Origin: Pocillopora damicornis
Lineage: Eukaryota
DNA length: 64,000 nucleotides
Direction: 5' to 3'
Assembly (NCBI RefSeq): GCF_003704095.1
Contig: NW_020847569.1
Span: 682,001 to 746,000 of the forward strand
In this document: in pieces, positions 16,723 to 50,400 of the stretch
Layout: the number at the start of each line of letters is the position of its first letter
How positions within the stretch are numbered: position 1 is the first letter of the stretch
The notes under the pieces: model-generated
Told to the model about the DNA's origin: nothing
The model's database searches: none
What the model saw: the letters and a program-made list of their open reading frames with translations, nothing else
Program-made: the position numbers and the translations under genes

Positions 16723-16822
16723 NNNNNNNNNNNNNNNNNNNNNNNNNNNNNNNNNNNNNNNNNNNNNNNNNNNNNNNNNNNNNNNNNNNNNNNNNNNNNN
16801 NNNNNNNNNNNNNNNNNNNNNN
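16723..16822. other. Assembly gap (100 N)
   Basis: Run of N; true length unknown. Confidence 1.
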
Positions 16823-21078: not shown

Positions 21079-21178
21079 NNNNNNNNNNNNNNNNNNNNNN
21101 NNNNNNNNNNNNNNNNNNNNNNNNNNNNNNNNNNNNNNNNNNNNNNNNNNNNNNNNNNNNNNNNNNNNNNNNNNNNNN
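21079..21178. other. Assembly gap (100 N)
   Basis: Run of N; true length unknown. Confidence 1.
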
Positions 21179-23897: not shown

Positions 23898-26800
23898 CTA
23901 GATAGCGATGCTGTTTGGTATTTTCTCCGGAAGCAAATAAGTATAAGGAAACTTTAACTTCTCATTCCTTTTCTTTATTGACGCCGAAATTCTCTGAAGT
24001 TTTCCTTGGAAGCGCAAGATGGCCTCTCTGGCAGCCATGTCAGTGAAGGAGCTATCAGGGTAATCACCAAGGAAACGCTTGGAGGTAAGAAAAGAATATC
24101 TACAATCAGCGTCAAAATTGGTTGACACATCATGTTTGAATGTTTGAAGGGAAATACCAGGATTTGTTAAAGAATATCAAGGTTATAACTTACCTCATCG
24201 GGAGAAATTCGAGTCAGATCGTTCACCGTCGCTATAGCAACTCCTGCCTGGTGCTTGGTGGGAAGAGTCTTCATTATGTCTTTCATGGTCACTGTGCCCT
24301 TTTCCTTTGGAGGCGGCTGTCTCATGAGGCCTGGCGAATTTGGCGGGAAACCGAGCACGTCCATCTGCGAGAAGTTTACAGCTGCATGTTGACAAGAGCA
24401 AGTAAAGATAACAATAGTTAGTATGTGAGCCAGCTGCTCAGCGCTTGCAATAGACGATGGGAAGCCATGGTCCGTCTCTCCTTCGCGGACAGTGTAGCCA
24501 TTGTCATGAATGTCGAGGATCCACGCCTGGAGTTCTGTATCCTGGCAGAGAGAAAAGTCACCGTTGAGTAATGATAAATTCTTGAATATGCATTTCGCGA
24601 TTTCCTGGTTTTCCAGATAAAACACTTCTCACCTTTTGAATAACCTCATCTAATGGGTAATAGATGGATACAATCCTTGTGACGAAATTCTTGATGGCCT
24701 GCCATAGTCGCAAGGCATCATCACGATAGTGGAACCCAGGTAGTTTGTCTGGATCGTCCACTCCTCTCTCCTTTAAGACATTTGGCAGGTCATACGACGA
24801 CCACTTCATGTTCTTGTAGTACTTTTTCATGAGATCAATATGACCTACAATGGACATTAAACTGAGCGTTATGAAAACGAAGTAACCTTTTGGTATCCTC
24901 TGAAATCATCACAAACTTTTTCGTACAAGTTGCTGCATGAACGGATGAAGAGATCTGGTTTACAAATATACATTGCCGAATAAAAATCTTCCAATGATAA
25001 CGAAACAAAAAACAATGTTAAAAGCTTTAAATATTGGACAGCTCATCCGAAATGTAACATGAATGGTAAAGTAAAGGACTCTTAAAAGCCGTCTTAACAA
25101 AGGTTTCGTCAAAAAGGTGTGCGATACGTTGAATTTTTGGGGCGTAAATATTCATTCAGGAAGTTAGGAGTTCTGGCAATATCCACAGACGGAGCTCCCT
25201 TACCTCCACCTCCTATACTAAGAGTTTGATCCACTACACCTCCAGCTGCAATGAGCCTAGCTCTCCCAAGGGTATTGATGGCCATAACTCCCTTCAAATG
25301 AGGGACCAATAGTTTCCACAGTGGGTGAAGAGAGGGAAGTTGTCTCCAGCTGGCGAGAGCGAGTGGCTCCATGAAGAAATGAGTGCGAAGAAGATGCGCA
25401 ATCGTCTAAAGAGAACGTAAAGGAAGGGGTGTTGGGCAAAATCAATTGGCAGGGGAAGGGAGGGGATAGTAACAGAAATCCTTACCATCTTTAGTGTTAA
25501 AAATCGTAAGTATGGTATTTACAATCATCATCATCATCCTAACAGATCGCTGGAATAGTTTATATCTGTGCATTAAGAGACGCAACGCTAACCAAATAGA
25601 ATCTATGCGGAGAGGTAATGTATCCACCTATTCTGGATTTCTATAGTTGAGATCCTTAACTTGAAAACTTACTTGATGCCACTGCATGTCAGCATTACGC
25701 AGCCACATCTTGGCGTAGGTCCAGTCCAATTCAGAGTCATTAGGGGTCCATAATGGGTTGGTCACGTCAGGTCCCTGGTGAAGCTGAATTGCGATGGGAA
25801 CCATATCTCCAGTGCCCTTGACATAGAACAAACCCATCGCCGCACACGTATAGCGCGTCTCTAAGTTTTCATCTAAGAATCCATAAGATAGGATGCCATC
25901 AAGAATGCTGAAGTCGACCATATAAACACGCCCGTCCTTATTGAAAATAATTTAAAAATGAATAATTAGGAAGAAAACAACAGAGCTTTGCACGAGCTAT
26001 GAACATGAAAAGGTTATATTCGATCAAATAGCCTGTAATAATAATAACAATAATAATTGACCACTCCCCAAATGGGACTTTCAGGGCCAATACAAAAAAA
26101 TTGTAAATAAACACAGGGTTAAAAAATTCCAACTGGCGGGAGACAGACCAGTTGGCTATAGACAAGGCGTAGCCACGAAGTTGAGCTCAGGCAACCTAAA
26201 ACAAATCCGGTGGGTAACAGGGTGAAGGGCATCAAACCGGGACCACCAGGTTACTAGCCCAGCGCCCCAACCACTCGGCCACATTGCTTCTTTAGTAAAT
26301 CAGTCATACGCATGTGTGATTATTCGATCGTTCGATCGTGCATTTGGTCTATCGGTCGTTATTTTTTCTCGTCGTCCCTAAGTTTCGTCGTCAGTCTTCT
26401 GGTCACACAGTCACTTCGTGAGTCTGTCGGTTCGATCATCCATGGACGCAAATGAACAGTTCCGAACAGTTTCATGTGTAGGTATATTTACCTTCATTGC
26501 TTTCTCCAGATTGTCATCAACATCAAGAAGGTTTCCAACCAATTGCTGTGTCACGGGAAAGTTGTAAGGTAGTTCCGTACATCGCTTGATCGTTTCAGGG
26601 TTACAGCCATTCAGGAACTGTGCCCCGTAGAAGCAGTCATCCTGCCAGTGGTCGGCAGCCATTGGAACATCACCAACGAAAGAAACAAACGCCTGCAACA
26701 AAATGGACTGCTGTAGATTTCCTTGTTAAGGTAGCACAACTCACTTATTTTCCCATCAAATGCACAACCTTCATGCATAAACGTTTTCACCTAAAATGTT

Positions 26801-29800
26801 TGTTGAAGACGCTGTGCAAAGAAAGTCCTGCAGCTTGTTGAGAGATTTCTTTTGTATTATCAAGCCTTTCTATGAAAACATATGAAACGCACATGGAACA
26901 TGCTTTGACAACCCAAACACACACTTGACAAAATTTCAAAAGTTCCCTCATAGGACCTAACGGATAAAGTAAGATTAAACAAATGCATACCTTACGGTAA
27001 TCATCGAAGTCTTCCCAAGAATCGAAGATATTCAATAACTTTATTAAACCAAGATTTACTAGTGCTTTATTTCTGGCGGTATGAAGGTCATCCACAGCTT
27101 CCTCTGTAAATTGGACATCTTTGGGGAGCTTTTTCCAGTGCTCAGACTTGACGTATCCTGGTAAACCGTGGTTCAAAGGATCTTCTCCCCATTGAAACAG
27201 TTCTTGCCTCTGTTGAATTTCGAGTCGCCTTTGGCTTCGTATCACTTCGTGCTGCTCATCTGTGACTAGAAGGGCTGGAGGAAAGTCAGAAGGCATTCTT
27301 TTAATCTGTCCTCGACCTTGCTTCACTTTCAACTCTCTATCATCGATAGAGGCATGAAACATTGACTAAGGAACCTGTCATTATTCATCGCCTGGGGGGA
27401 AGGGGGGGTTGTGTTACGATCAAAATTTACTTCACGCCCCCTCCCACCATAGGATTCTGTAACACTGTTATGATCCCCCTCTATAGGAGTTAATCGGGAA
27501 TCAATTTTCCATTGCCCCCCTATTGGCGCTGTTGGCAAAGACTAATGCTCCCTCCATCCCCCCTGAAAACCATGTGGTCCTCCAAAAATCCCCCGACCCC
27601 CTCCAGGCGATAAATAAAAATGCTCCCTAAAGAGGGTGCATTTTATTTATCAGTACTGTGGAGATTTATGTCATCATTAACTTCGTACCTTTTCCTGTAA
27701 AGAAGATGGATTCACTCTGCACCCATCGAAAGCAAGGAAATTCATAAAGCTTTTGAGGATTTTGGCTGCAGGTGATCATGATTTTCTCCACGAACCAGTC
27801 ACTATACAAACCACCCTGATCATTGTGTAACTTAATCATCAACAAATCTCCGACATCTTCAGCTGCCAAGATATACGTATCGTCTTGTCCAGCCTTAAAG
27901 TCGTCATGGAGCCATTTGTCCATCAAAAGAGGTCTTGTTCTACCTCTACTGCCTAAATACGATTTCAAAAGAGTCACTCTGAGTCAAATACAATGGAGTC
28001 CATCATTTCTCTCCATAACTGAAAAGATAACTGATTTGTCTGAGTGCAGATCTAAATGGGAATAAGTACCTTCTGATGGCTTTGGTGATCTATCCAAGTG
28101 TACCTTTTAACAGCACTGACAAGTCATAAAAAGTATGGGTCTAGGATCTTCTTAAACAAGACCGTCATCATTGCATGCCTATGACGTGACGAGTTCAGTC
28201 AGCGGCTGTGAAGTAGGGAACAAACCCACGAAAGAGTAGACTAAATAAAGAATCTCGATTGATTTTAATGCCACTCAACCCGAGCTTTCTCTTCTCTGGG
28301 CCGGGTTTTTCAAAGCTGGATTAAGATACTCCAGGGTTAGTGCGAAATCTGATTTCAGAACTGATAGCTTTAAAACAAGATTCAGTCGGATTCTTTTTGT
28401 CTAGAATACGACTATTTGATGCTCTAAAAAGAACACAAGAAATTATCCTAAGAATGCTTTTGAATAAAGGAATGAAAAACTCAGATTACGGTTTAATCTT
28501 GGGTTAGCGCTAATCAGCCTTCGAACAACTGGGCCCTGGATTCTAAAATGGAAGATGGTAAACACTCTCGAATTTTTCGGTATTAAGAATTATCGTCGTA
28601 GCGTCTCATCGAGGGTGCATGTCGTCCCATATATTCAGTTTGCATACAATTATCCGCTGATCAACGATCTATCTGCTGGACTAGATATGCTCGTATCTTG
28701 GAAATAAAGAAGTCATACCTGTGATTGTAAGGGTTACATCGGCGTTGGTACCAGCATGTTTTCGGTCTCCCGTGAACACAGAAATGCAGTAGATGGACAT
28801 ATCTCCCTCTGATTTAGAAGTCTTCCTTAAAGAAAAGCTCTGCTTTTTAGGTCGTGATTGAAGTTTCGACTTTAAATACGCCATGGAATTATAGTCGTAG
28901 ATGGTCTTGGCAGAAGGGAGTGACAAAGACCCACACGGTATATTTTCTAATGAACAACGGGTTCCCTTTGTTACATCCTCTGGTAAAAGTGACGTCAACC
29001 TGACTTCGGCGAGGTCTAGCCAAGGGTGAGTTGCTTGGTCCCAGACTCGAGCCGCGTGAAGCACAAGATGTGAGTCGTCGGGTTGTTTTTCATGTAGTTG
29101 TATTTGAAGTTTGTATTGAACGCCACCTTCTGACATACGCTCTTCAAAATCAGCAGTTAAATAGGACTTAGGTCTCCTATCACCCTCCCATCGAAATGTT
29201 TCCCTACAGAAAAACAAGAAAAATTAACTAACAATTCCTATAGCTGGTTTCATGGTAGATTTGGGAGATCAGCCAGACAAGCTAACTAGCACCTCTAGTA
29301 TCAGTTTCTGCGACCACATTGACCACTACTATCATAATGGTAAAAAAGCAAAGCAAAACAAAACAAACAAACGAGCCGTGGGGAGCAGGGACACAAGAAA
29401 AATCATTGCGATGGCAGTAATTTGCCGGTTTAGTAGTCATAAAATTGTTTTTGACGTACACTTTTTTTTTTTAAGAAATTGACATACCTAGCTGCGTTGT
29501 TATTGTGCAGGAGTCTGGCTCAGAGGTTGCGGATTTACGCCTTTCCTGGGTCATTGTGCTGAGATCTCGGGAAAGACAACGTAGTCTTACGGTCCTTATG
29601 CTTCCCAAAAATTCAAATTGGTTCATACCGGTGCACTTACTGCTAGAGAAAACTAAAGAAATCCTGAGCATACGCTCACCGAAAGTTCGCTTAGCATTTC
29701 TTCAACAATGTTCATAATTTTCCTCTCGCAGTACACCTAATCGCTTAAAGTGAAAATTGGATAAACTACTAGTGTACATGTTACTTGACCCTTTTATGAT

Positions 29801-31554
29801 TTTTTCTCAGGGCTGAATTAACTAAAAATAATTCCTCTTTGGGAATTCCCGAGAATGAACAACAGGTCCTACCAAGGTTTTCTTTGCTCTTCTTCTGTCA
29901 TAAGTCCAGTTTCTTCTCTATCATCAGCAGGGACGAGGCGAAATTTGGCGTAGCGAGGCACACCGTCTCTCGCTTTGTATTCAAACGCCATCCACGAGTA
30001 ATACCTCTGGTCAGTAAATGATTCCGGAGCTCGACGAAATGCAGCAATGGTTAAGTAAAAGCTGTGTTTGTAAAAGCAGATAAGAAACGGAAATTCATGA
30101 ATTGCGGTACTTTTAGCTTGTGGCTAAGACCATTTCTGTTTAATTACTTGGCGGCAGATGCAAGAAAAAAACAGCCTGTTTCGGGCACTCAGTTTTGATT
30201 ACAAACAAAAAAGCGGATGGCTCTCCATTTTTGTTTTTGGATCTTCTTGAAAAAGGTAGTAAGGCTACTCAATAACAGGGAATCCAGTCTTGTGGCCGCA
30301 TATGTTTAATGGAAAGATCTCAGGACAGATCGGAAGTTGGAACTTATCGAAAGACTTCTCCCGAGCGTCTTGTGAATAAATTGAAAATGAAATATCGTAT
30401 CTCATTTCTTTCACTTAAATGTGAGTTGGCTCGAAATCGAATAAAATTTGATAACAGGTCAATTACACTTCCCTTTCTCCAGGCATTTATCTTTTATGTA
30501 AAGTTTTCTTTATTTTGTTACGATATGTGAACAGATAATGTTGCTACTTACTGCCAAGGGTCCTCCAAACAATATGTCTCAAATGCTTCTGTCTCACCAT
30601 GCAACGCACTAAGCATCTTGTCTAAGCTATAGAGGCTCCAATACGCAGCCTCCTCACCAGTATGTAACAACAGATCAAAAGGTGATTCGAAGTCACTATC
30701 GGCAAACTTCAGAGCCGCTAGTCTCACGTCTAATTCGGCATCGTCTACCTTGATAAGATTACAGTGGAGGAGGCGGGCTGGAAACACCCTTTCTGCAGAG
30801 AAAAAGTCGTGCGCAGGGAGGAGAGGGTTGTTGAGGACTGTTACAACTCCAGTGGCTCCTACACCTCTTGTTTGTTGTGTCAAGAGTGTCTTGAGAAGGA
30901 ACCCGGCTTGATACTTTTTAACATAAAGTGCCAACTGCGACGCACTGAATGGCCCAGCTTCTGGTGGAGGCTGTAAAGGGAAGCAAGTACAGAACTAGTC
31001 TCTAACCTTTATCTAAAACAAAATTCGTTCACTATGGAGATTAAATGAAAACTTTAACATTATCCTGGAGAATTGCTAGACACTCCTGATTATATCCCTT
31101 CACAAAAACCATTCCTAATGTTTAAATCGATGACGATTACAAATAATAGCGGTAACTCTATCGTCGATGTTAACGAGTATGATATGGATCAAGGACAATT
31201 ACCAAACAAATATAATGATAGCAATGATGAAAATGTTTCATCTCTGAGGTGAGATCGGACATTAAAGGCATAAAGAACTTGATTACCTCGTCTGCCTCTA
31301 CCATCATTTTTTCAAATAATTCCTGTCCCATCATTTCCTTGATTATCTTGAATCCCATGTTCTTCCCTATTTTCATTGTAAAAAAGCACAAATTAGTCAA
31401 AGAAAACATAAATCATGCATAATTTAAACTCAGACAGGAGATGAACAGTTCTTGTTTACTTACAGCCTTCTGGCTCCTGATTTGTTTCAACTGTTGGTCT
31501 CTTGATGGTTTGATTCACTCTTTTCTTTTTTCTCTTTGATGGAATAATGCCCAT
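23898..31554 (-). CDS. AOS-LOX-type fusion, copy A: catalase-like domain lacking heme His/Tyr + PLAT + LOX
   Basis: Exon 1 (31554-31464) MGIIPSKRKKKR... splices to WKNMGFK..., then PPPEAGPF...[30 protein letters not shown] and YKLQIQLHE (cAOS-like). PLAT motif FTGDRKHAGTNA. LOX motifs [27 protein letters not shown] and PEKIPNSIAI*. The exon phases checked are compatible. Confidence 0.92.
26110..26288 (-). mobile_element. tRNA-derived SINE-like element
   Basis: The minus strand begins gcaatgTGGCCGAGTGGttggggcgctgg...cccGGTTTGATGCCc (Pol III A and B boxes), followed by a non-tRNA body. Confidence 0.55.
28297..28539. mobile_element. MITE-like element with short imperfect terminal inverted repeats
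   Basis: ctgggccgggtttttcaaagctggattaag ... taatcagccttcgaacaactgggccc. Elements with similar termini at ~8480-8600 and ~15887-16027. Confidence 0.5.
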
Positions 31555-32431
31555 GTTTCTAAACAAGTGTTTTTTTTCTGGTAAGTGATAGAATAAAGAG
31601 TCAATGCCGAGCATAAGAGGAGTGTTTATGCATGTGGTGATCCTAGTCGACCAGCCCTATTCTTAGTTACGTTTGACCCCGTAAGCTCTTGCTCCCCATT
31701 TGAGACAGCTTTCGAGACTGAGTATTTTGACCACAAACGCAGTACAATGACCCGGCCAGAGACACCAAGCCCGGAAATTTCGATCCGGAGTCCCACCTTT
31801 CCCGATGTTTTAGGTTAATTGGTAGGCATTCGGTGAAGGTTTTGGTCGCCTTTGCAGCTTTTGATGCTAATATTTCCGGGACGAAACGTCCATTGTTCTC
31901 ACGAAGTGTTTTAAAGAGCGCATCCAACATTGGAAATGTAAACGTGATAACATAGCCTGCGCGGCAGAGAGGGTAAGTCTGTCAGCCGCGCGCTCCTTGC
32001 CCCTTACCCCACCCCTCCCCCCTCATCCCTTATCATCTCCCCGAGCGTGTCACGCAGACGAAGAATAATGCATTTGTGAAGCTAATCGTCTTCATCATTT
32101 ATATTTGTCCAAGATTATCATACCGATGGTTTATTTTGGATATTGAAAGTCACTCGGGATTTTAGAGGTAACTTAACGCATTCAAATATCATTAAAGTGT
32201 ACTTTTATCCCATCTTTTTCTTCTAATCAAGCTGAAGAACGTTTCTTTCATAAGAGACATCGCTTTCCTTACATTCAAAGTAAATTTCAACTCAGTAACT
32301 AGCGATGTAGGAGCGCATATTAATGACTCCTTCTACAAGCCACCCGAAGTCATTAATATGCTTGCATATTCACGAGAGGACTTGTATTTTGAACACTATT
32401 AAGAACTAAAGGTTAGCTGTAATAATAAAAA

Positions 32432-32525
32432 AGGGCTAACGCTCAACACGTCAGCTTTGAAACTCTTTGCGGTGCCCAATTTACGTAATCAACTGTGTTG
32501 ACAATGCTAGTATTACCCTAGTATA

Positions 32526-32556
<31 letters not shown>

Positions 32557-32572
32557 CAGAAACTTACTCCCT
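32432..32572 (+). mobile_element. Degenerate copy of the 63628 repeat family
   Basis: Shares aagggctaacgctc...gtcagcttt...ctctcccaccgacgcagcaccacagtttct; ribozyme core truncated and mutated. Confidence 0.75.
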
Positions 32573-33078
32573 TGATTCATTTGTAATAATCAAGACATGC
32601 TCTAAAATCTTCATCGACGGAAACGTTAAAAAAATAATGAAACGTGACAATTGTCACACAACTCTTTCAAAAATCAATCCGTTTCCATGATATTGGACTC
32701 CCACTGAAACTAAATTTTCATCGTTTCGTATAAATATAGCACTTAGCCCGCTGGCAGATTGAAATAGAACAAAGCTAGTGAAGTAAAAAAACCATTTAAC
32801 GAGCAGATACAGCTTTCGGTCAAACAACGCGAAATAACACAATTATGAAGCATCGGAATGGTGTGCTCATTACCAGTTCGCACAATGATTGTGGAGTTTG
32901 CATTTCATCATTGGTCCTGGTGAAAGGCCGGTCAGAAACATTGCACAAAACATGTCTGTAGCAAATACACTACTTGATACCATATACTCACCTGCTATGA
33001 ACCTGTGAACGATATCTTGCAAATTCCCTCAATATTCATTTCCCATATCGATCACTGCGTCACTTGTTGCTCTTGCCC

Positions 33079-33205
33079 TGACGTCAAGTGACAAAGAACT
33101 CAGCTGTTGCCTAGAAACAAAGACCTAAAGCTGTTTATAATGCCCTAAGGGAACTTAACACCTCTGCATGTTACTTTGAGATCACTGAACCTTTGCTAAT
33201 TGTAC
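33079..33205 (-). promoter_or_regulatory. Putative promoter block of copy A (CRE + RFX X-box), conserved upstream of copy B
   Basis: TGACGTCA at 33079-33086 and GTTGCCTAGAAAC at 33106-33118. The block aligns by eye to ~43540-43685. A candidate 5'UTR splice donor lies at ~32990. Confidence 0.55.
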
Positions 33206-34651
33206 CGTGGAAAGCGTTCGTGTCTAAACATTTTAAAAATATAAAGGGACGTATTTTTAAGGGCTTAACTCATCCATAAATCTCTAATCTCTCTTTATTC
33301 AATAATAATGATGAAATTTAAAAGCTTTTTCTTTCATGTTACGTTTCATGTTTCCCCGACAGCGCTTGGCCAGTGGTTGCGAAAACAAATGTCTGTCTGA
33401 GCTAAGCTAAGTAGCACCAATACAATGTATAATCCGACACCAGTTTCGAGTACTGTATTATAAGGCACTTGGCTTTGTAACCGTAAAAAAATCCACGATC
33501 AAAACAGCAGCTTAAAATTGTGACAACTTACTTCGCGCTTCTTGTCATTGACGTGATCTTACGATTATTTTTGTATTTCTAGCTTAGGCCCACGAATTGA
33601 CGTTTAGACATCGAAGATGTGACGATATCTTCATGTCATAAATTTCAAATGCGCTGTATCACGCAATGAAGGCCGAGAGACGTATGGCTTACGTCACTAT
33701 TTGTACACTGTAAGCGGAGACGGCAAAGTTTTGTCGATGGCGATCATCAAAGTCCACTATACACAAAACGATCACACGATTTATTTCCACATTTCTTTCA
33801 AAATATCAAGGGCTGCAGCCAGGATGGATCATAATAAAATCTAAAACTTTTCCAAGCTGAATATTTATTCAAGAAACACGCTTTGGAGGTCTTTGGTTTT
33901 GCAAAACAAAAGCGAAAAACCTCTCTAACAGCCGTTGAGGTTTACAAGATATTAACCCAAAGCCAATGACAGAATCTTCAATTGCTTCCTTTGTAAACGT
34001 ATATGCCGTTGCACTCACTCATGAGCTATCGAGTTAAACACTCGAGAAGAAATTCCATATCTAGGCACGCTCATATATCATTCTCTATTTCTCGCGGCTG
34101 AAAGGGAAAATCGGCAGCTGGAAAATTTGCCACAGGCCGATTTTGGTCGTTTACCCGAAAGATTTCTTCTGCCGGTAAGGACAAAGTCAATAAATGAGAA
34201 TTTTGTAACTTGAAAATTACGACCATTGATGTTTTGTAATCCCGATTCATTTTTCCATCTTGAGACTTTGCGCCAACGCTTTGTATGATTGTCGATTCTT
34301 TTTTTTTCATTTATTAAATCGGCTTTTCTTGTCACCACAGGGCTATTGTGTTTATATGATACGCAAAATAATGCATGGCTGCTTGTAGGTATAGAATTTC
34401 TCTTCTCGTGTTAAACCCGACATTTCACTAATTCGCTGCGCTCACTCGTGAGCTATCGACTTAACATCGAAGAGAAATCCCATATCTACGCCTGCTCATG
34501 TATTATTTTCTATTTATTGTTACTCTTTTTAGTGTTTTGTTTCTTTTTATTACGCAAAATTATGTTCTTATAAACTAATTCAGTTCTCTAAATTTATCAT
34601 CAGAGCCAAACTAGTAGACGAACTTCCGTCTTAGAATTGATGACTTAACAA

Positions 34652-34862
34652 TTAACCCTTTAACTCCCAGATCAAATTTGTTATTCTCCTTACTGTCAAC
34701 CATACAATTCGTATAATGTTAGTTCAGAGAATTTAGTATTTGATCAACTAATTATCCCTAAATTGATCTTCTTCTTCATTCTCACCACTTATCTGGTTGA
34801 TGTTGTATAGACATTGCAAGGAAAAATTCTGTCTTGGTCACTCATGGGAGTTAACGGGTTAA
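34652..34862. mobile_element. ~210-bp MITE with TTAA-CCCTT termini (piggyBac-like, non-autonomous)
   Basis: ttaaccctttaactccc ... gggagttaacgggttaa terminal inverted repeats. Related copies at ~2520-2648, 5340-5545, 6953-7130, 7175-7386, 10310-10665, 20448-20700 and 61717-61928. Confidence 0.75.
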
Positions 34863-35365
34863 CCCTTACTGCCTCTGGCCACTGGGAGAGAAACTCAGCT
34901 ACACAGGCAGCATCGAAGTGCACCAGTCATAATTGTTGAGAACCAACTATACACGATTTGCAGTCGAAACGTCGAAGCGCGATCCTCATCATTGGAAAAA
35001 CGATATAGAAAACTCATTACTTCATCGAGTCTCTTATTCTAAATTTATTTGTCTACATTTCTCGGATTAAATCATCAAGTTGATGCGACTTGGATCATCG
35101 TCGGATGTTTATTGGTTAATCATTTATCCTTGAAAGAGAACATCAACCTTATATACTGAGAGAGTACAAGTACATGGTCCAAATGGCACATACGAAAAAC
35201 TTGACTCGGGATTCATATCATCGGAGAAATAGCATTCTGGAGTCGTTCATTCGATGCGCAGTTCAATGATATCCAGGGTACTTCTGAGAAGTATTTCCTG
35301 TCTATTTCACACTGGAACCCATATCTGGGTGTTAATGATATGTGAGTATCTTGGCGGAACCATGC

Positions 35366-38300
35366 CTAAATAGCTATACTGTTTGGTATTCTTTCCGGAA
35401 GTAAATGAATGTAAGGAAACTTCAAAGTATCATTCCTTTTCTTTATGGACCTTGAAATACGATTAAGTTTTCCTTGGAAGAGCAAAATGGCCTCTCTGGC
35501 AGCCATGTCAGTAAAGGAGCCATCAGAGTAATCACCAAGGAAACGCTTCATAGGAAAAAGAGAGAGATAAATGCACTTGTTAATACGATAACCTATACGC
35601 AAAAATATAACTCAGTAAGATAAATACGTGAAGTGTGTATCTATTATCTGAACTCTGGCTTGAGGGGAAAACTGAAAACTATAGGGATGGCTATTTCGAC
35701 AAAATCTAACTTAGGCCGCAGTTTTAAAAAATCGATGGACCTCGAGATTTACTTTTGAGTGGGCTGTCTGAAGTGAATAAATATTTCCAGTCCATCTATA
35801 AAACTGTTCCCATCATAAGTTCAGATTAAAAAATATGGCCTAAAACACAGGTTTACTAAACAACAACTCAAGTCAATTTAAATGACCGCATATAATTCAG
35901 CTTTAACTGTAACAGTGATTGGCATGACAACTTGAAAAAAGAAATTTATATTTTTTATTGTGTGATAACTACACAACAGGAAAAGTAATAGAAAAGTATA
36001 GTTTTGGGACAAAAGTTAAGATATTTCTTACCTCATCAGGAAATATGCGTGTTAGATCGTAGACGGTCGCTATAGCAACTCCTACATGGTGCTGGTTGGG
36101 CAGGCTTTTCATAACGTCTTCCATGGTCAGTTTGCCCTTCTCTGTTGGAGGAGGCTGTCGCATGAGAGTAGGTGCATTGGGAGAGAAGCCATACACGTCC
36201 ATCATAGAAAAGTTGACGGCTGCGTGTTGACAAGAGTAGGTAAATATGACAATAGTAAGTAGGTTGGCCAGCTGCTCAGAGCTTGCAACGCACGATGGGA
36301 AGCCATGGTCCGCCTCACCCTCCCGGACAGTGTAGCCATTGTTGTGAATGTCTTCGATCCACGCTTGGAGTTCTGTGTCCTGTTGGGAAAAAAGGCAGCA
36401 TGGAGTGAGAGTGTATTTTAGAAAAGGTTTCCAGCTCTTTCTTACTTTCTGAGATAAAACACTTCTCACCCTTTTGATATCCTCATCTGATTTGTAATAA
36501 ATCGATAGCATCCTTTTGATGAAGTCATTTATGGCCTGCCATAGTCGCAAAGCATCGTCGCGATAGTGGAATCCCGGAAGTTTGTCTGGATCGTCCACTC
36601 CTCTCTCCTTTAGGACATTTGGTAAGTCATACGATGACCAATTTATGTCCTTGTAGTGCTTTTTCATGAGATCAATGTGACCTAAAATGGGAAAAATGAG
36701 CAGATTATTATAAAACACGATAAACAAATACTGGCAATATTCACGTTGTAACCCAGGAATGTTGGAGCAATAATGGATTTGAAATGCATGCTTACCATTT
36801 CATATGTTGGAGAATATTGTAAAAAAAAGACCATGAATAGAAATGTAATCTCAACTGACAACCAGAAAAGCTGATTTGATATATAAGGTTAAAAAATTGC
36901 TCATACAATGAATGTTCAGCCTTTCGTATAGGTGATGTGGTAGCACTTGAAATTATGATTTTAATTTCATTCATATGATATGCGTGAAATTTGAAAGATG
37001 ATATGAAAGGTGTAAAATAGGGGGGAACAAATTATGCAGGAGACCCAGACAGAAAAGGGACACCAAAATGATGGCCGGGTGACATTCACAGAAGCATTTT
37101 ACCTCCGCCTCCCACACTAAGTGTGTGATCAGCCACGCCCCCCGCAGGAAGCAGTAATTCCCTTGCAACGGTGTTGATGGCCAAAACTCCCTTTATGTGA
37201 GGTATCAGTAGTTTCCATAAAGGGTGGACGGAGGGAAGCTGTCTCCAGGTTGCAACAGCGATCGGTTCCATGAACAGATGAGTTCGAAGAAGGTGAGTGA
37301 TCATCTGCAAAAGAAAAATGTTTACAAATTTTAGGAAGGTTACTAAGTTTTTTGTTGCAAAATTTTGTGTAGTCGCCTAAAACGTATGTTTAAACAAGCA
37401 CTTATAAGTAAGGTAAATCTTGTACAGTGAACTGAGTTGAGATTCATATCTTCAAGTACATGTGACTCAATTTTCTTGTTTTACTTTGCAGTGTTACTTT
37501 CCATAGTGTTATTATCTTTTTCAGTAAAACTTTTGAATATGCAAATGATACATAAGAAACTACTTTTGAAGTGAGAATAAAGAAAAAAAATACATATTTG
37601 CGACTCCGAACTGTTATGGCTCTGGAAAATGACAACCTGCGCGGCGATATGCCTCGTTAAATTGTGAACCTGTGAAGTTTTCTCTGTTATGTCACTATTA
37701 TTTGCTCAGGCTCTATTGCTGTGTTTATTTTTTCTTCTTTGTTCTTCGTCACTCGCGAACGTGACAGGATCATACACGTAGGGTGGGTAGAAATGTTTTG
37801 TAATCTTTCACCTGGTTGCAAATGTCGTTTTAGATCCGGAAATACTCACCTGATGCCACTGAACGTCTGCAGTGCGCAACCACATCTTAGCGAAGGTCCA
37901 GTCCAACTCAGAATCATTTGGGGTCCATATTGGGTTGGTCTCATTCGTTTCTTGGTGGAACTGAATTGCTATGGGTGCTATGTCTCCAGTGCCCTTGACA
38001 TAGAACAACCCAAACGGCGCAGATATGTAGCGCTTCTCTAAGTTCTCGTCATTCCAGCCGTAAAGCTTGATGTCCTCAAGGATCTTGAAATCAACCATGT
38101 AAAGACGACCTTCCTGAAATGTATGATAAAATTGAAAAAGAAATACTCACGCACAAAACGTCAGTCTTGAATTGGGAACACAAACTGAAGTTTGTTTTAA
38201 CGAGAGTCACTCGGCTTTTTGGGTCAATAACCCGTCGGTATATTCTTCCGAACGTCCGTCTATTCGTGCTTACATCTTCCGTTCGTCCCTCCTTTCCTCG

Positions 38301-41300
38301 CTGCCGTTCGTCAATCCGTTCAAATCAATTGAAAAAAAACACTTACTTTCATTGCTTTCTCTAATGTATCACCCTCATCAAGAAGGTTGCCAATCAGCTC
38401 TTGTGTGACGGGGAAGCTAGGGGGGAGTTCAGTACATCGTTTGATTGTATCAGGGTTGCAGCCATTCAGGAACTGCGCTCCGTAGAAGTTGTCTTCCTGC
38501 CAATGGTCGGCGGCTTGTGGAACATCACCAACAAAAGCGACAAACGCCTAGATAAAAGTCGACCTCCCGCTAATCAATCGAATTTCACATGTAACACGTT
38601 TAAAATTCTAGTCTAAAACACGAAGAGAATTTTATTATTGGTTTTCGTATAAGATCTCGCATTACTTTTTATTAATATTATGCCAGATTAAAGAGTAATT
38701 ACTGAAATATACGGACTTAAAGATTAACAGAACCTCCCGCGGGTGTCTCTTTACAGTTAGATAAAAAGGAAATGCTTAGAAATCTCTTTGACGATGAATC
38801 CGACTTTGAATTGTATCATGCCTAAACCTACCTTACGGTAATCATCAAAGTCTTCCCAAGAATCGAAGATATTCCATAATTTTATCAAGCCAAGGTTTAT
38901 TAGAGCTTTCTGTCTGGCTGTGTGAAGGTCGTCGGCGGCTTCAGTGGTAAACTGGACATCTTTAGGTAGTTTTTTCCAATTTTCAGACTTGACATATCCA
39001 GGTAAACAGTGAAATACAGGATCGTCTCCCCACTGGAACAGTTCTTGTCTCTGTTGAATTTCAATTCGTCTTTGGTTTTGCACTGCTTCATGCTGCTTCT
39101 CTGTGACAAGTAACGCTGAAGTAGATTAAACAACACCAACCATAAGGAATTGTGATATATATTTGTTGTATTCTAGAGTAATAGGTATTTTATTTAATCG
39201 CAAGAGTTGCAGCGCACGAAGAGCGCTTAACTAGGTATCGAGTTATGCCATAAACGATGATTGTGCCCCGTCAAAGTCAGAGTGGTAAGTGTGATTGTGA
39301 TATGATATTTGTAATTCCCTTTTCGTTTATCCGTCTATAATACGATTAGGGATCCTCATCATGTTATACCACGTGTCTACGCAAAGATCTGTTTGATCGA
39401 GTAAAACAACTAAGTTGCAAACAACTTAACAACTAAGTTGCAATTTGCAGAAAATACCTTCCGCGAATACCTCATGCAAAGAAAAAATCGACAATACACT
39501 CCAAATTTCTACTTTTCTTTAGGGCCGTTAAGGTTTGTAATAACCTCCAAGGGATGAAGCCTTGAAAGATAAATGTAGAGAAACACCCAAGAAAAAAATT
39601 ATATTGAGACAGTTTTTGGCTAGAGATGATAAGAAGGGTTGAAAATATAGAAATTCTTGAAAACTTGAGTTTTCATTCTTGACAAGCATGGCCCTCGGCG
39701 AAGCTCCTTTGAAGTTGCAGTTGTCCCAAATTTACCGAAAAATCTCAGCGATATCGTTGTCAAAGTTATCCTTTCATACAACCCTGAACAACATGGTTGC
39801 TTCCATCAACACTTACCTTTTCCTTCGAAGAAGACGGATTCACTCTGTACCCACTGAAAGCAAGGGAATTCATAAAGCCTCTGGGGATCTTGGCTACAGG
39901 TAATCATGATTTTCTCCACAAACCAGTCACTTAACAATCCACTTTGATCATTGTGTAGTTTAATCATTAAAAGCTCCCCAACATCTTCTGCAGCAAGGAG
40001 ATAAGTATCTTCTTTTCCAGCTTCAAGATCGTCATGGAGCAATTTGTCCATCAAAAGAGGTCTTGTTCTTCCTTTGGTTCCTTGGAAAACGTTTTTTTAA
40101 AAAAAGCTATTATTGCAGTAATCATAGACATTTTACCATTCTAAATATCAAACGTTAGTTCATCTTTGCCTTCAGAGAGGGTGAACTCTGAATTGTAAAG
40201 TATTTTTCCATTGCATAACCGTGACAATAGATTTAATGTGAAGAAAGTGCAATGTTTGAATTCAGTCTTACCTGTGATGGTGAGGGTTACATCGGCGTTG
40301 GTACCAGCATATTTTCGATCGCCAGTGAAAACTGAGATGCAGTAAATGGACATATCTTCCCCGGTTTTCGAAGGTCGCCGCAGATTCAATTTATTGCTTG
40401 AGCCAGATTGTACTTTTAATTTCAAGTACGCCGAGGAATTGTAGTCGTAGATAGTCTTGGCTGGTGGCACTGACAAAGATGAGGGCATATTTTCTAACGA
40501 AGAGCGTGTTGATTCAGTTACGTCTAATGGTATAAGTGAAGTCAACTTGACGTTAGCTAAGTCCAACCAAGGGTGAGTGACTTGGTCCCAGACTCTAGAC
40601 GCGTGGAGAACAAGATGTGAGTCCTCGGGTTGTATTTCATGTAGTTGTATTTGAAGTTTGTATTGAATACCACCGTCTGACATGCGCTCTTCAAATTCAG
40701 AAGTTAGATAATCTTTAGGTCTCCTATCGCCCTCCCAACGGAATGTTTCCCTACAGAAAAGAGAGGAGAAGTAAGCTAAGAAATGATTGATTCTCTTGTT
40801 TAAAGTTAGCCGAGCTCTGATTCATTCGTTCCAGTACAAGCTTCTAAGACTGATTGATAATGACCATACATCACACTTTTTAGTATGATTACAAAGAATG
40901 GACAACAGGTCCTACCAAGGTTTTCTTTGCTCTTCTTCTGTAATAAGTCCAGTTTCTTCTCTATCATCAGAAGGGACGAGGCGAAATTTGGCGTAGCGAG
41001 GCACACCGTCTTTCGCTTTGTATTCAAACGCCATCCACGAGTAATACCGCTGATCAGTAAATGAGTTAGGAGCTCGACGAAATGCAGCAATGGTCAAATA
41101 GAAGCTGTATTTGTAAAAACAGAAAAAATTAACTTTCTAAATTCCATTTGACCAACTCTTTGTCTTTTTGTGTTACTGGCTTAGCAGCCGGCGTCGTAAG
41201 CATTCTGAAAACAATTTTGGGTTATTATACTTTTGGGTCATCAGTGTTTTCACATATTTTACATTGATTGTACTTACTGCCAAGGATCCTCCGCACAATA

Positions 41301-42619
41301 GGTCTCAAATGCTTTTATGTCTCCATTCAACGCACTAAGCATCTTGTCTAAGCTATAAAGGCTCCAATATGCAGCCTCTTCGCCAGTATACAAAAACAGA
41401 TCGAAAGGTGATTCAAAGTCACTGTCGGCAAACTTGAGAGTCGTTAATCTGATGTCCAATTCGGCATCGTCCATCTTAACGAGATTACAGTGACGGAGAC
41501 GGACTGGAAACACCCTTTCTGCAGAAAAAAATTCGTGGGCAGGGAGGAGTGGGTTGTTTAGGACTGTTACAACCCCAGATGCACCTACACCTCTCGTCTG
41601 TTGTGTAACAAGTGACCTGAGAACAAAGCCGGCTTGAAACTTTTTTACATAAAGTGCTAATTGTGACGCACTGAACGGTCCAGCTTCTGGTGGAGGCTGT
41701 AAAGGGAAGCAAAAACACGACATCAGTCATGCTTACAAATCACGGTTATATTTGGAGAGGCCTTAAACACGAACAACATAAGAAGGTCGGTAAATCTAAC
41801 ATCCTGTAGTTGATTATAGAAAAACATGCTATTTTTCTTGCAAAGAACGTGCGGCACTGTTGATCCTAGCTGTATGCAGCTGCAGGGCATGTATCACATT
41901 TAAACTTAGTAATGGTTTAACTCATCAAAGAGTTCTGTGTAGTTAAACGGTCACGCATCGCAACGCGGAAACCGCAGGTGCGGGGTTCTATTCCTTAAGA
42001 GAAGTCAGATTTGTTCCTTATCCCACTCCCGTCATGACCGTGACAAGACGGATAACCTTTTGCTGTAGTCTTCAATACTGGTGTTTAGTGTTTTGGATAA
42101 TGTATGGGGAAAAGATTTCGATGAAACAACAAAAAATACAATAGCGAGAACAAAAACGACAAAAAATTAAACAGAGGGTAACCCTAGACGAAAATCGTTT
42201 CTAATTTTGATAACGATGATGGCGATTATGAATTATGAGGGTGACGTTAGCGATTGCGTTACCGAGACAAAAGCAATATTGGTTATGAAATTTTGATGAA
42301 AATTCTATGAAAAAGTTCTTCACCTCGTCTGCCTCTGCCATCTTTTTTTCAAACAATTCCACTCCCATTGATTCCTTAAATATCTTGAATCCCATATTCT
42401 TCCCTGTTGAAATACACATACAACTCCCAAAATTAGTTCAAATCGTTTACACTGGAAATAATAACATTTAGAGACAGCAAGAGAGGATAAATATGCTCTC
42501 TTTGAGACAGTTTTTTTTCTCTACTTACATGGTTCTCGTTCTTCGCTTACTTCAATCGTCGGCCTCTTAATAGTTCCAATTACTTTGTTCTTCTTCCTCT
42601 TTGAAGGAATAATCCCCAT
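35366..42619 (-). CDS. AOS-LOX-type fusion, copy B: catalase-like domain lacking heme His/Tyr + PLAT + LOX with Ala at the Coffa site
   Basis: ATG 42619, MGIIPSKRKKNK...; same exon structure as copy A. LOX motifs [27 protein letters not shown] and PERIPNSIAI*. Confidence 0.92.
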
Positions 42620-47468: not shown

Positions 47469-50400
47469 CTAAATGGCTATACTGTTTGGTGTTCTCTCTG
47501 GCAGCAGATATTCGTAAGGGACCTCTAACCGTTTATTTCTTTCCTTTATTGCGCTGGAAATCTCATTGAGCTTTCCTTGAAAGCGTAGAATTGCTTCCAA
47601 TGCAGCGTTGTCGGTGAATAGGCCGTCCGTATAGTCACCAAGGAAACGCTTGGGGAGAAAAAAAACGGATGATTTTTTAGTAAGGGAAGGTAGGAAGAGT
47701 TATCCATAAGTCAGCACGTCAGCTTTGTCCGATAAAGAGGTCGATGAGACTTTTAGTCTCCCTCCGACCAGGAAGATAAATGGGTTCCAAGGGTCGTTAA
47801 CTGTGAGTTAAACCCTTTAAAATGCTGGGGGTGACCTTTGATTGACATGCCTCATCTTATCCTAGTCTCGTGGCAACTCCTAATTGTTTCTTGAAGCTAC
47901 CGTAACCTGAACAATCTTTGGTAACAGTGAGTCTCGTGTTCAAACTTGAATTCAACCAATATCTAGCACCATTCACAATAATGGATACTTAAATATGTCG
48001 CATTTTGATCAATTTGGCTATCTTCCCCACATCCCCTGGTCATATTTTTTGTATCAGGCTGACCTGAATTAAAATTACCTCGTCTGGAAAGATGCGTGTC
48101 AAATCATACACTGTTGCTATGGTTACTCCCGCCTGATGCTTTGTTGGTAAACATTTCATGACATCTTTTATGGTTACAACTCCCTTCCTTGTGGGAGGCG
48201 GCTGTCGCATCAGAGCGGGAGCGTTTGGCGGGAAACCAAAAGTATCCATTTGAGAAAAATTCACAGCCGCGTGTTGGCACGAGCAGGTGAAGATTATGAT
48301 AGTCAGCAGATGTGTCAGCTCTGGGATGCTTTTAACCGATACAGGGAAGCCATGACATTTCTCCCCGTTACGCACAGGATAACCATTGTTGTGGAGATCC
48401 AGAATCCACGCTTGGAGCTCTGTGTCCTGTGAAGAGTTGTTAAACCATTATTTCAAAAGACCTGGTTGAAACAGTTGGAATCGTTGCTTTTGCATTAATA
48501 TCAAGATCTGTAAGATATATTCGCTGAGAATTAATGGCTGACGATGCACCAATAAGCTATATCCCAACGAGCAACGACTCTCAGATACACGAGTCGTCTA
48601 GAACTTCTTAGTGTTTAGAGTGGATATGTTTGCATGCGGTTTTAAGAAAATTGCTTAAAGATATATGAAGGATGAGTACGTCCAGGGTTTTAACCTAATG
48701 ACGTACAAGAAGAACACTGGAATATAAAGAGCATTCCCGAGAACTTTTTTTTTAACCTCAGAGGGACACTGGGATGTAACACAAACACAATACTTGCCAT
48801 TTCAATGTCATGATCAGAATGGTAGTAAACTGATAGAATGTCTTTGATGAAATCGCCGATGGCCTGCCACAGACGTAAGGCGTCGTCTCGATAGTGGAAG
48901 CCAGGAAGCTTATTTGCATCAAAAACCCCTCTCTCTTTTAACACTTTGGGAAGGTCATACGATAACCAGCTTAAGCTTTTGTAATACTTCTTCATAAGAG
49001 CTATGTGACCTGGGGATAAGAAGACACCATGCACTGTAAAATAAATAATCTTTAAATTTCCTCAGCTAAAGAGTAGCCTCATCCACGTCTATAAAGCAAA
49101 ACTGGCGATCATACACTGCACTCATTTAGTCTTTGGCCACTATCCTTTTGTATGGCATTAAGGCAAAAGACTGGACGCAACCTGGTTGAGTGGTATGAAC
49201 CCTGAATAGAAAAGCCAGAATTCCACTGGTCTTCCTCTCTCCAATTTAAGGGTTAACACCCATAATATTTTCATTTAAATATGTTTCATTGATTTGCTCT
49301 TCTGCGCCAGTCCCAGTACTAAGAACACCATTGAGGGAAAATAGATCCTAAATTTTTGTAACCATGTACACTTCAACCACTTTTTACGTATAAATATCAT
49401 ACTTGTGAACTGCGGTTTTAGAAATGAAAATGTAAGCGATCTTCGCAGTGATGAACATTACTTAAGCAGTAATAAAACTAACGCCTGAAAAAAATTCAGA
49501 AGATCTGAAAAAAAAATTCTCAAAAATAATTTTAATATATTCACAGTCATTGATTCATCACTTCGCGGGTGTACTACGAACCAACATAAAAAGCAGCTCC
49601 TAGTTGGTAGTGCACCGCACCGGTATCGCAGAGGTCATGGGTTCACATCTCGTACAAGCCTGAATTTTTTCAGGCATTATTTTCACTACTGCTTCAGTAA
49701 TGTTTACGAAGGTCGTTTTCATATTTAATGTGCACTTCATTGGCCTTACCTCCACCACCCAGGCTAAGCGTGTTGTCCGCCACACCTCCGGCAGGAATAA
49801 GTCTCTCTCTTCCAAGCGTGTTGATGGCCAGAACTCCTCTCACGTGAGGGGACAATAATTTCCACAAGGGGTGGAGTGCTGGCAATTGCCTCCTGCTGGC
49901 AAGAGCGACAGGCTCCATGAAAAGATGAGTACGAAGTAGATGGGTTATCATCTGTTAATGCAAAGGAAATTTCGATCAAATTCTATAAGAAATATCGAGA
50001 GAAATATTGATACATTGATTCAAAAGGGTAGTATTGTCTTGCTAGGATTCGAAATACAGGACTGACATTTTAAGACTTACTTGATGCCATTGTGAGTCAG
50101 CATTGCGAAGCCACATTTTGGCGTAGGTCCAGTCTAGCTCAGAATCATTTGGGGTCCATATTGGGTTTGTCTCACTTGGCTCTTGATGGAACTGAATTGC
50201 TATTGGCACTACATCCCCACTACCTCGAACATAGAACAAACCTAAAGATGCAGACGTGTAGCGCCTTTCTAGTTTTGAATCGTTTTGGCCATAATGTGGA
50301 ATGTCGTCAAGAATCTCGTAATCTACCATGTACACACGGCCATCCTGAAAATGATACAGTGATAAAAGCCTTTATTTAATGTTCCATACAAACAACTCTT

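What the first reader, a model, noticed from the sequence alone, without database searches (positions are those of the whole stretch)
28720..41700. Two LOX fusions (A and B) carry a conserved but apparently heme-less pseudo-catalase domain
Seen: copy C reads [16 protein letters not shown], whereas A reads TLLTQQTRGVGA (~30860-30890) and B reads SLVTQQTRGVGA (~41585-41620). This clean 4-codon deletion removes the Thr-His. At the proximal side C has YLRSKIYP, A has YLKSKLQS (~28856-28880) and B has YLKLKVQS (~40405-40430), i.e. Arg->Lys and Tyr->Gln. Established: coral catalase-like AOS needs the distal Thr66-His67 and the proximal RxxxY heme ligand (Arg349/Tyr353). The domain nevertheless has no stops or frameshifts, and one 64-aa exon differs at only 4 residues between A and B while intron interiors do not align. 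The LOX halves keep all Fe ligands. Inference: a selected pseudo-enzyme domain fused to an active LOX. It could act as a hydroperoxide/lipid-binding module, a scaffold or heterodimer partner for copy C, or a way to release free HPETE rather than allene oxide. I am not aware of such a class being described.
Basis: partly seen in the sequence, partly recalled or inferred. Interest (0 to 1): 0.9.

Follow-up and report, generated by a model that had tools for sequence, protein, structure and literature searches.

The report
Coral lipoxygenase fusions with ligand-less catalase-like domain
Two of three neighbouring coral lipoxygenase fusion genes carry an N-terminal catalase-like domain that has lost the residues that hold and use heme, yet the domain is transcribed, intact in several coral genomes and under strong purifying selection, so it most likely has a non-heme role.

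Summary
The minus strand holds a tandem array: C, then B, then A, then a lipoxygenase-only gene D. [quoted passage not shown] Measured against Plexaura cAOS (PDB 1U5U), a 4-codon deletion removes Arg64, Thr66 and His67. Arg349 is Lys and Tyr353 is Gln. Asn137 is His in A and Tyr in B. Arg102 is Leu in A only. All five LOX iron ligands are kept.

RNA contigs from four studies show every splice joint of A's catalase-like exons, with the ligand-less codons unchanged. An ortholog pair with the same deletion and Lys/Gln lies in another coral assembly, in the same C, B, A order. dN/dS of the domain is 0.12-0.19 (upper bootstrap limit 0.28). That equals the LOX half and the canonical copy C.

A tree puts A and B in a supported clade, sister to C-type genes. 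Every member of that clade lacks His67, Tyr353 or both, in different combinations.

Two corrections. Lõhelaid and Samel (2018) already noted such residue changes in stony-coral sequences. The near-identical 64-aa exon partly reflects A/B gene conversion.

Heme loss itself remains an inference. The scan has not noted this on other DNA.

The parts
23898..31554 (-). Gene A: 13 coding exons, about 1072 aa, AOS-like domain fused to PLAT-LOX. A further 5' exon lies upstream of 31577.
   Evidence: Gene model. The 5' coding exon comes from RNA joints. No stops.
31464..31554 (-). A exon 0: N-terminus MGIIPSKRKKK..., a myristoylation-type MGxxxS motif plus a polybasic run.
   Evidence: RNA joint 31366|31464 in runs X18 and X15. 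The frame was read. The exon is conserved in homolog loci.
31287..31366 (-). A exon 1 (WKNMGFKII...).
   Evidence: RNA joints 31366|31464 and 30970|31287.
30552..30970 (-). A exon 2: distal half of the catalase-like domain.
   Evidence: 1U5U residues 65-171, E 2.4e-23. RNA joints on both sides.
30854..30889 (-). A distal site TLLTQQTRGVGA: the equivalents of Arg64, Gly65, Thr66 and His67 are deleted.
   Evidence: RNA contigs show no differing letters here (table 3).
29873..30061 (-). A exon 3: the most conserved catalase-like exon, and a likely A/B gene-conversion tract.
   Evidence: 1U5U residues 173-237. Synonymous divergence 0.15 between A and B.
28719..29203 (-). A exon 4: proximal half of the catalase-like domain, linker and start of PLAT.
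   Evidence: 3DY5 residues 243-401, E 8.4e-33. RNA joints in 4 runs.
28855..28878 (-). A proximal site YLKSKLQS: Arg349 is Lys (28870-28872) and Tyr353 is Gln (28858-28860).
23898..27952 (-). A exons 5-12: PLAT and LOX. His757/His762 lie at 25379-25396, His943/Asn947 at 24374-24388, C-terminal Ile at 23901-23903.
35366..42619 (-). Gene B: same 13-exon structure, about 1070 aa.
   Evidence: Its expression was not tested.
41278..41696 (-). B exon 2, with distal site SLVTQQTRGVGA at 41580-41615.
40272..40750 (-). B exon 4, with proximal site YLKLKVQS at 40405-40428 (Lys349, Gln353).
47469..55975 (-). Gene C, the comparator: Arg64, Thr66, His67, Arg102, Arg349 and Tyr353 are kept; Asn137 is His. 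The distal site is at 54686-54733 and the proximal site at 53080-53103.
   Evidence: Its 5' exon is inferred by analogy only.

Best explanation
A and B belong to a stony-coral paralog clade of AOS-LOX fusion proteins. The clade arose by tandem duplication of a canonical, heme-type gene of the C kind. In it the N-terminal catalase-like domain no longer does heme chemistry.

In A and B the distal Thr-His and Arg64 are deleted. The proximal Tyr is Gln and its partner Arg is Lys. The O-O cleavage that makes allene oxide is therefore very unlikely.

The lipoxygenase half is intact. These proteins should still oxygenate polyunsaturated fatty acids and release the hydroperoxide, or pass it to another enzyme, instead of converting it themselves.

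The dead domain is kept by purifying selection over its whole length, as strongly as the LOX half. So it works as a non-catalytic module.

My committed guess for its role has two parts:
- It is a fatty-acid or hydroperoxide-binding module.
- It also orients the enzyme on membranes. It sits between an N-terminal myristoyl-plus-polybasic anchor motif and the PLAT-LOX body, and it tunes substrate access or product release.

Shown: residue loss, intact ORFs, splicing into mRNA for A, conservation across assemblies, low dN/dS, clade structure.

Inferred: no heme, an active LOX, and the module's role.
For: Residue loss is mapped on PDB 1U5U/3DY5 numbering. The set of heme residues is named in PMC5617202.

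All five LOX iron ligands are kept.

Spliced RNA contigs from 4 studies cover A exons 0-5 and carry the same codons.

Another coral assembly (ERZ25067556) has the same array, C-type then two A/B-type genes. Both A/B-type genes have the same 4-aa deletion and Lys349/Gln353.

All 9 homolog gene models are open, with conserved intron positions.

NG86 dN/dS of the catalase-like domain, with bootstrap ranges:
- A against its positional ortholog: 0.12 [0.08-0.18].
- B against its positional ortholog: 0.12.
- A against B: 0.17 [0.11-0.26].
- LOX half: 0.12-0.14.
- Canonical C against its ortholog: 0.13.

The tree shows a clade with 97/98 support, sister to C-type. It holds only genes that lack His67 and/or Tyr353:
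- Gln/Gln in A/B-type.
- Tyr353 to Leu in three genes.
- His lost with Tyr kept in two.
- His to Tyr and Tyr to Lys in one.

This pattern fits a release of constraint on the heme site at the base of the clade.

137 of 330 domain columns are invariant across the 10 clade members.

The N-terminal MGxxxS plus Lys/Arg exon is conserved in all clade members.
Against: No protein was made, so heme binding was not measured. A Lys at 349, or the His at position 137 in A, could in principle take part in an unusual ligation.

Uniform constraint over the whole domain would also fit a domain that is still an enzyme of another kind.

Only A's transcripts were examined. B's expression is untested.

dN/dS is pairwise NG86, not a codon-model test. 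Orthology of A and B with the two genes of the other species is positional only: the tree leaves the four unresolved, possibly because of gene conversion.

The spliced proteins could not be folded with the tools, so whether the heme cavity persists is unknown.
Confidence: 0.65

Rival explanations
1. The domain is still a hemoprotein, or binds another cofactor. It uses non-canonical ligands and catalyses a different hydroperoxide reaction.
For: Whole-domain purifying selection is as strong as in canonical copy C. The new residues (Gln-Gln, Lys349, Gln353) are themselves invariant among all A/B-type sequences seen. Other clade members keep either His67 or Tyr353.
Against: Gln is not a heme iron ligand. 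In A, six of the seven alignable heme-site residues named in PMC5617202 are changed, and so is Arg349, the partner of Tyr353. The replacement at 353 differs between subclades: Gln, Leu, Lys, and Met or Ser in fragments. That looks like released constraint, not a new ligand.
Confidence: 0.13
2. The domain is a decaying relic carried along by a functional LOX, and its conservation reflects recent duplication or gene conversion.
For: Exon 3 shows a conversion-like drop in synonymous divergence between A and B. The two genes of the other species group together in the tree.
Against: Synonymous divergence is 0.54-0.77 over the domain, while dN/dS is 0.12-0.19. There are no stops or frameshifts in 10 genes from 8 assemblies, counting the window's own genome. 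Introns are saturated while exons align. All exons are spliced into mRNA.
Confidence: 0.03
3. Assembly or gene-model artefact: the His and Tyr codons exist but were missed or misaligned.
For: Alignment at the distal site is ambiguous between a gap and Gln-Gln substitution.
Against: Either alignment leaves no His near the site; the next His is about 20 residues downstream and is conserved in all copies. Independent assemblies and RNA contigs carry the same letters.
Confidence: 0.01

Closest known systems
Plexaura homomalla allene oxide synthase-lipoxygenase fusion (cAOS-8R-LOX; PDB 1U5U, 3DY5)
   Same: Same two-domain architecture: an N-terminal catalase-related domain, then PLAT and an iron lipoxygenase. 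Clear sequence homology over all exons. The same LOX iron ligands.
   Different: A and B lack Arg64, Thr66, His67, Asn137, Arg349 and Tyr353, and A also lacks Arg102. They carry an extra N-terminal MGxxxS/polybasic exon that is not matched in the solved protein.
Stony-coral AOS-LOX 'group 2B' of Lõhelaid and Samel 2018 (O. faveolata XP_020618715.1, A. millepora c002903, A. digitifera XM_015912608.1; PMC5793058)
   Same: Stony-coral paralogs forming a separate clade with altered AOS catalytic residues. The O. faveolata protein is reported without T66/H67 and with Y353L. That matches the Tyr353-to-Leu subclade found here in L004, L005 and L009.
   Different: The paper only lists the substitutions and leaves function open. 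I could not align the named proteins directly, because none was returned by the searches.
Capnella imbricata catalase-related hydroperoxide lyase-LOX (cHPL; PMC5617202)
   Same: Shows that paralogous catalase-related domains on LOX fusions can change function after duplication.
   Different: cHPL keeps all heme residues and differs only in substrate-channel residues such as Phe150. A and B lost the heme site itself.
Amphioxus 'AOS-LOX-like' proteins (XP_078679810.1, XP_066285942.1, XP_066267927.1, XP_078602947.1)
   Same: Fusions of a catalase-like domain to LOX in which Arg349 and Tyr353 are replaced, and in one also His67. The domain is as conserved between Branchiostoma species as the LOX half.
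   Different: They are the outgroup to all the coral genes in the tree, so the losses are independent. Most keep the distal His. No paper found in the searches discusses this.

Membership tests
Catalase-related allene oxide synthase hemoprotein (cAOS, as in PDB 1U5U) | Sequence homology to the catalase-related cAOS fold | tested here: met
   A exons 2, 3 and 4 match 1U5U/3DY5 at E 2.4e-23, 5.3e-11 and 8.4e-33. Pfam Catalase itself is not reached by A or B, and is reached only below cut-off by C.
Catalase-related allene oxide synthase hemoprotein (cAOS, as in PDB 1U5U) | Distal Thr66-His67 pair | tested here: not met
   Deleted in A and B; present in C.
Catalase-related allene oxide synthase hemoprotein (cAOS, as in PDB 1U5U) | Proximal Tyr353 iron ligand with Arg349 | tested here: not met
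   Gln353 and Lys349 in A and B.
Catalase-related allene oxide synthase hemoprotein (cAOS, as in PDB 1U5U) | Heme-coordinating Arg64, Arg102, Arg360 | tested here: inconclusive
   Arg64 is deleted in both. Arg102 is Leu in A but kept in B. Arg360 falls in a linker that does not align reliably, even in C.
Catalase-related allene oxide synthase hemoprotein (cAOS, as in PDB 1U5U) | Bound heme and turnover of fatty-acid hydroperoxide | not testable with these tools
   Needs purified protein.
Iron lipoxygenase (PF00305) with PLAT domain | Iron ligands His757, His762, His943, Asn947 and the C-terminal Ile | tested here: met
   In A by alignment to 3DY5 and the C-terminal ...SIAI before the stop. In B the same motifs. 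Pfam PF00305 hits at E 1e-15 to 1e-19.
Iron lipoxygenase (PF00305) with PLAT domain | PLAT domain between the two halves | tested here: met
   The end of A exon 4 aligns to the first residues of 8R-LOX structures. The orthologous exon 5 carries PF01477 in the called genes of L001, L003-L010.
Pseudoenzyme domain (inactive homolog kept by selection) | Loss of catalytic residues together with purifying selection and expression | tested here: met
   Residue loss. dN/dS 0.12-0.19. Spliced RNA for A. B's RNA was not examined.
Pseudoenzyme domain (inactive homolog kept by selection) | Demonstrated lack of the ancestral activity | not testable with these tools
   Needs enzyme assays.

The most novel reading that the evidence does not exclude
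Catalase-fold domains that have given up heme form a recurrent, selected class of non-catalytic modules on animal lipoxygenases. They arose independently in reef-building corals (a whole paralog clade next to a canonical gene), in amphioxus and in a nemertean. In corals they are combined with an N-terminal myristoyl/polybasic membrane anchor. They would control where and how lipoxygenase products are released in wound and stress signalling.
Probability: 0.4. Interest if true: 0.7.

Novelty: new variant of a known kind. Interest (0 to 1): 0.58.

Why it matters
AOS-LOX genes are among the most cited stress, wound and disease markers in coral transcriptomics. They are routinely annotated and counted as heme-binding allene oxide synthases (for example PMC12019164).

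In the genome searched here, two of six copies cannot do that chemistry by their residues. So pathway inferences from expression data need to separate the paralogs.

For enzymology, this would be a catalase fold kept under strong selection without its heme ligands. It offers a natural experiment on what the fold does besides catalysis. The canonical sister gene next door serves as a control.

Tried and rejected
- **Pfam on single exons.** The scan gives no catalase hit for A or B and only a sub-threshold one for C. Family assignment therefore rests on PDB homology.
- **Representative-library search.** It returned no full-length cnidarian relative, only ORF-sized exon fragments. The closest full-length proteins (38% identity) are from amphioxus. 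Named coral proteins from the 2018 paper could not be aligned.
- **All 'Logan' protein hits.** They proved to be genomic ORFs with intron-derived ends, not transcript products. No unaltered full-domain protein was available.
- I did not submit the joined A/B/C proteins to structure prediction, fold search, complex prediction or database searches. Joined models were used only inside my own scripts for alignment, tree and dN/dS.
- **First junction solver.** Local-alignment scoring picked wrong splice sites around exon 2/3. It was replaced by global scoring with splice-site terms. RNA joints later confirmed the result.
- **First reading of the 5' joint.** I dropped one base and wrongly suggested an upstream ORF ending before the start codon. 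This was corrected.
- **Papers not held.** Oldham 2005, Gilbert 2008 and Mashhadi 2016 were not available. Statements about them rest on citations in PMC5617202 and PMC8124189, or on my own knowledge.
- **Proximal-site states across the wider family.** They are unreliable for the short bacterial group, which aligns poorly there. Only the distal His count (85 of 91) and the hand-checked animal fusions are used.
Full report
**What is there**

The window (38-43% G+C) carries four tandem lipoxygenase genes on the minus strand:
- C, 55975-47469
- B, 42619-35366
- A, 31554-23898
- D, about 14849-8882, which has PLAT and LOX only

I built gene models with a splice-junction solver guided by full-length relatives. 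For A, B and C it gives twelve exons from the Met of MGFK..., with the same intron positions and phases and open frames of 1039, 1037 and 1048 codons. RNA evidence adds one more 5' coding exon (below). Pairwise protein identity is 80% for A/B and 67% for either against C.

**The observation**

Alignment to the solved Plexaura homomalla protein fixes the numbering.
- Copy C has Arg64, Thr66, His67 and Arg102, and the Arg349/Tyr353 pair.
- Copy A has Lys at 349 and Gln at 353, and B reads the same.
- At the distal site HMMER can lay Gln-Gln on Thr66-His67 without a gap.
- A fragment from another coral (P0153) reads QQRGTRP. It shows that QQ is upstream and that the missing four residues are the Arg64-Gly-Thr66-His67 block.

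PMC5617202 lists the heme residues of cAOS as R64, R102 and R360 (coordinating), T66, H67 and N137 (distal), and Y353 (proximal). A has lost six of the seven, plus Arg349. B keeps only Arg102. Arg360 cannot be placed.

The lipoxygenase ligands His757, His762, His943, Asn947 and the terminal Ile are intact. These are the residues named in PMC5793058.

**Is the domain expressed?**

Contigs of four RNA runs from four studies were laid on 27600-31700. They show joints at exactly the modelled boundaries:
- 27952|28719 in all four runs
- 29203|29873 in two runs
- 30061|30552 in two runs
- 30970|31287 in two runs
- 31366|31464 in two runs, a further joint upstream

One 847-base contig runs from the 5' exon through exons 1 and 2 into exon 3. 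A 1713-base contig runs from exon 4 through exon 5; its remaining 1050 bases lie beyond the laid stretch, on the LOX side, and were not placed. No differing letters fall on the distal or proximal codons.

**Is it under selection?**

Exon-sized ORF fragments from other coral assemblies led to ten loci. I modelled nine homologous genes from them, all open and with the same intron positions.

One assembly, ERZ25067556, repeats the window's layout. It has a C-type gene followed by two genes with the same 4-residue deletion, Lys349 and Gln353.

Nei-Gojobori dN/dS values, with bootstrap ranges:

| Comparison | Catalase-like domain | LOX half |
|---|---|---|
| A vs positional ortholog | 0.12 (0.08-0.18) | 0.12 |
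| B vs positional ortholog | 0.12 | 0.12 |
| A vs B | 0.17 (0.11-0.26) | 0.14 |
| Canonical C vs its ortholog | 0.13 | 0.08 |

- Synonymous divergence in these pairs is 0.5-0.9, so the comparisons are informative.
- Between A and B, exons align and introns do not.
It therefore also bears a conversion tract.
- Against C, the same exon has the lowest non-synonymous divergence of the domain, with saturated synonymous sites.

**Where it sits in the family**

A maximum-likelihood tree used amphioxus proteins and one protist-transcriptome protein as outgroup. C and its ortholog come out as sister to a clade (support 97/98) that holds all ten genes with an altered heme site. The clade has four kinds:
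- A/B-type: no His, Gln353.
- Three genes with a 6-residue deletion just before a retained Thr-His, and Leu at 353. This matches what Lõhelaid and Samel reported for O. faveolata.
- Two genes without His but with Arg349/Tyr353.
- One gene with His to Tyr and Tyr to Lys.

Different losses in different branches, on a background of strong overall constraint, fit a change of function at the base of the clade. After that change the heme residues were no longer needed.

At least five assemblies place such a gene directly downstream of a C-like gene. The window's own genome has six catalase-like copies: C, A, B and three distant ones elsewhere, all with Arg-x-Thr-His.

**Beyond corals**

In the 50%-identity representative library the distal His is present in 85 of 91 aligned family members. 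The exceptions, apart from A and B:
- an amphioxus protein
- a nemertean protein
- a brachiopod protein where His may be shifted by one

All four amphioxus 'AOS-LOX-like' clusters lack Arg349 and Tyr353. Their catalase-like domain is as conserved between Branchiostoma species as the LOX half. None of the papers I found discusses this.

**How it most likely works**

Established knowledge of cAOS is cited in PMC5617202. His67 starts homolytic cleavage of the hydroperoxide on a tyrosinate-ligated heme. Without His67, Tyr353 and most propionate-binding arginines, this chemistry should be gone.

The LOX half should still make a hydroperoxide. The product would then leave as such, or go to a heme-bearing paralog or a CYP74-clan enzyme.

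Constraint is spread over the whole domain and not over a patch. I therefore favour a role that uses the fold as a whole: binding of lipid substrate or product, and positioning of the enzyme on membranes.

The RNA-supported N-terminus of A reads MGIIPSKRKKK..., a myristoylation-type motif followed by a polybasic run. The same exon precedes exon 1 in B and in all nine clade-member homolog loci examined; C has a weaker version ([10 protein letters not shown]), and for the C-type ortholog locus L010 the scan returned no hit. This part is inference.

**Novelty**

The residue changes were listed in 2018 for one Orbicella and two Acropora sequences, with function left open. So the class is not wholly undescribed. 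New here:
- the Gln/Gln-Lys form with its deletion
- the evidence for selection and expression
- the clade structure and conserved tandem order
- the N-terminal anchor motif
- the parallel in amphioxus

I rate it a new variant of a known kind.

**Limits**

- No protein chemistry was done.
- dN/dS is pairwise only.
- Species names of the assemblies are not known to me.
- That step is left out.

Noticed in passing
window 31464-31554 (A), 42529-42619 (B), 55888-55975 (C); L001, L003-L009 upstream of exon 1: An upstream coding exon gives all three proteins an N-terminus of the MGxxxS type followed by Lys/Arg runs (MGIIPSKRKKK in A and B; [10 protein letters not shown] in C). This is a classic N-myristoylation plus polybasic membrane-anchor pattern. 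It is supported by RNA joints for A only, and it is conserved in all nine clade-member homolog loci examined from other coral assemblies.
   Followed up: partly
window 8882-14849, minus strand: A fourth tandem gene, D, has PLAT and lipoxygenase exons but no detectable catalase-like exons upstream as far as gene A. Two 100-N gaps (16723-16822 and 21079-21178) lie in that interval, so absence is not certain.
   Followed up: partly
window 29873-30061 vs 40916-41104: Exon 3 of A and B has synonymous divergence 0.15, against 0.33-0.63 in the other exons. The nucleotide match (93.5%) runs about 20 bases into the flanking introns. This is a likely gene-conversion tract between A and B.
   Followed up: yes
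window 54380-54778 (copy C exon 2): The heme-competent copy C has His at the Asn137 position and Phe at position 150, the residue that marks the hydroperoxide-lyase paralog in Capnella (PMC5617202). A and B have Leu at 150.
   Followed up: partly
P0006, P0007, P0019, P0020 (Branchiostoma), P0149 (Tubulanus): Amphioxus and nemertean catalase-like/LOX fusion proteins also lack the proximal Arg/Tyr pair, and two of them lack the distal His. The domain is as conserved between amphioxus species as the LOX half.
   Followed up: partly
L001, L008, L010 (assembly ERZ25067556); L003, L004, L009: The tandem order, a C-type gene followed by altered-site gene(s), is repeated in other coral assemblies. In ERZ25067556 the two A/B-type genes group with each other and not one-to-one with A and B. 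This suggests independent duplication or concerted evolution.
   Followed up: partly
G000:C2496:231914-245035 and G000:C3860:8306-8659: Three more catalase-like exon-2 copies lie elsewhere in the same genome, about 41-44% identical to C. All have the canonical Arg-x-Thr-His motif, and one was seen with the proximal Arg/Tyr pair. They probably belong to the other stony-coral AOS-LOX group.
   Followed up: partly
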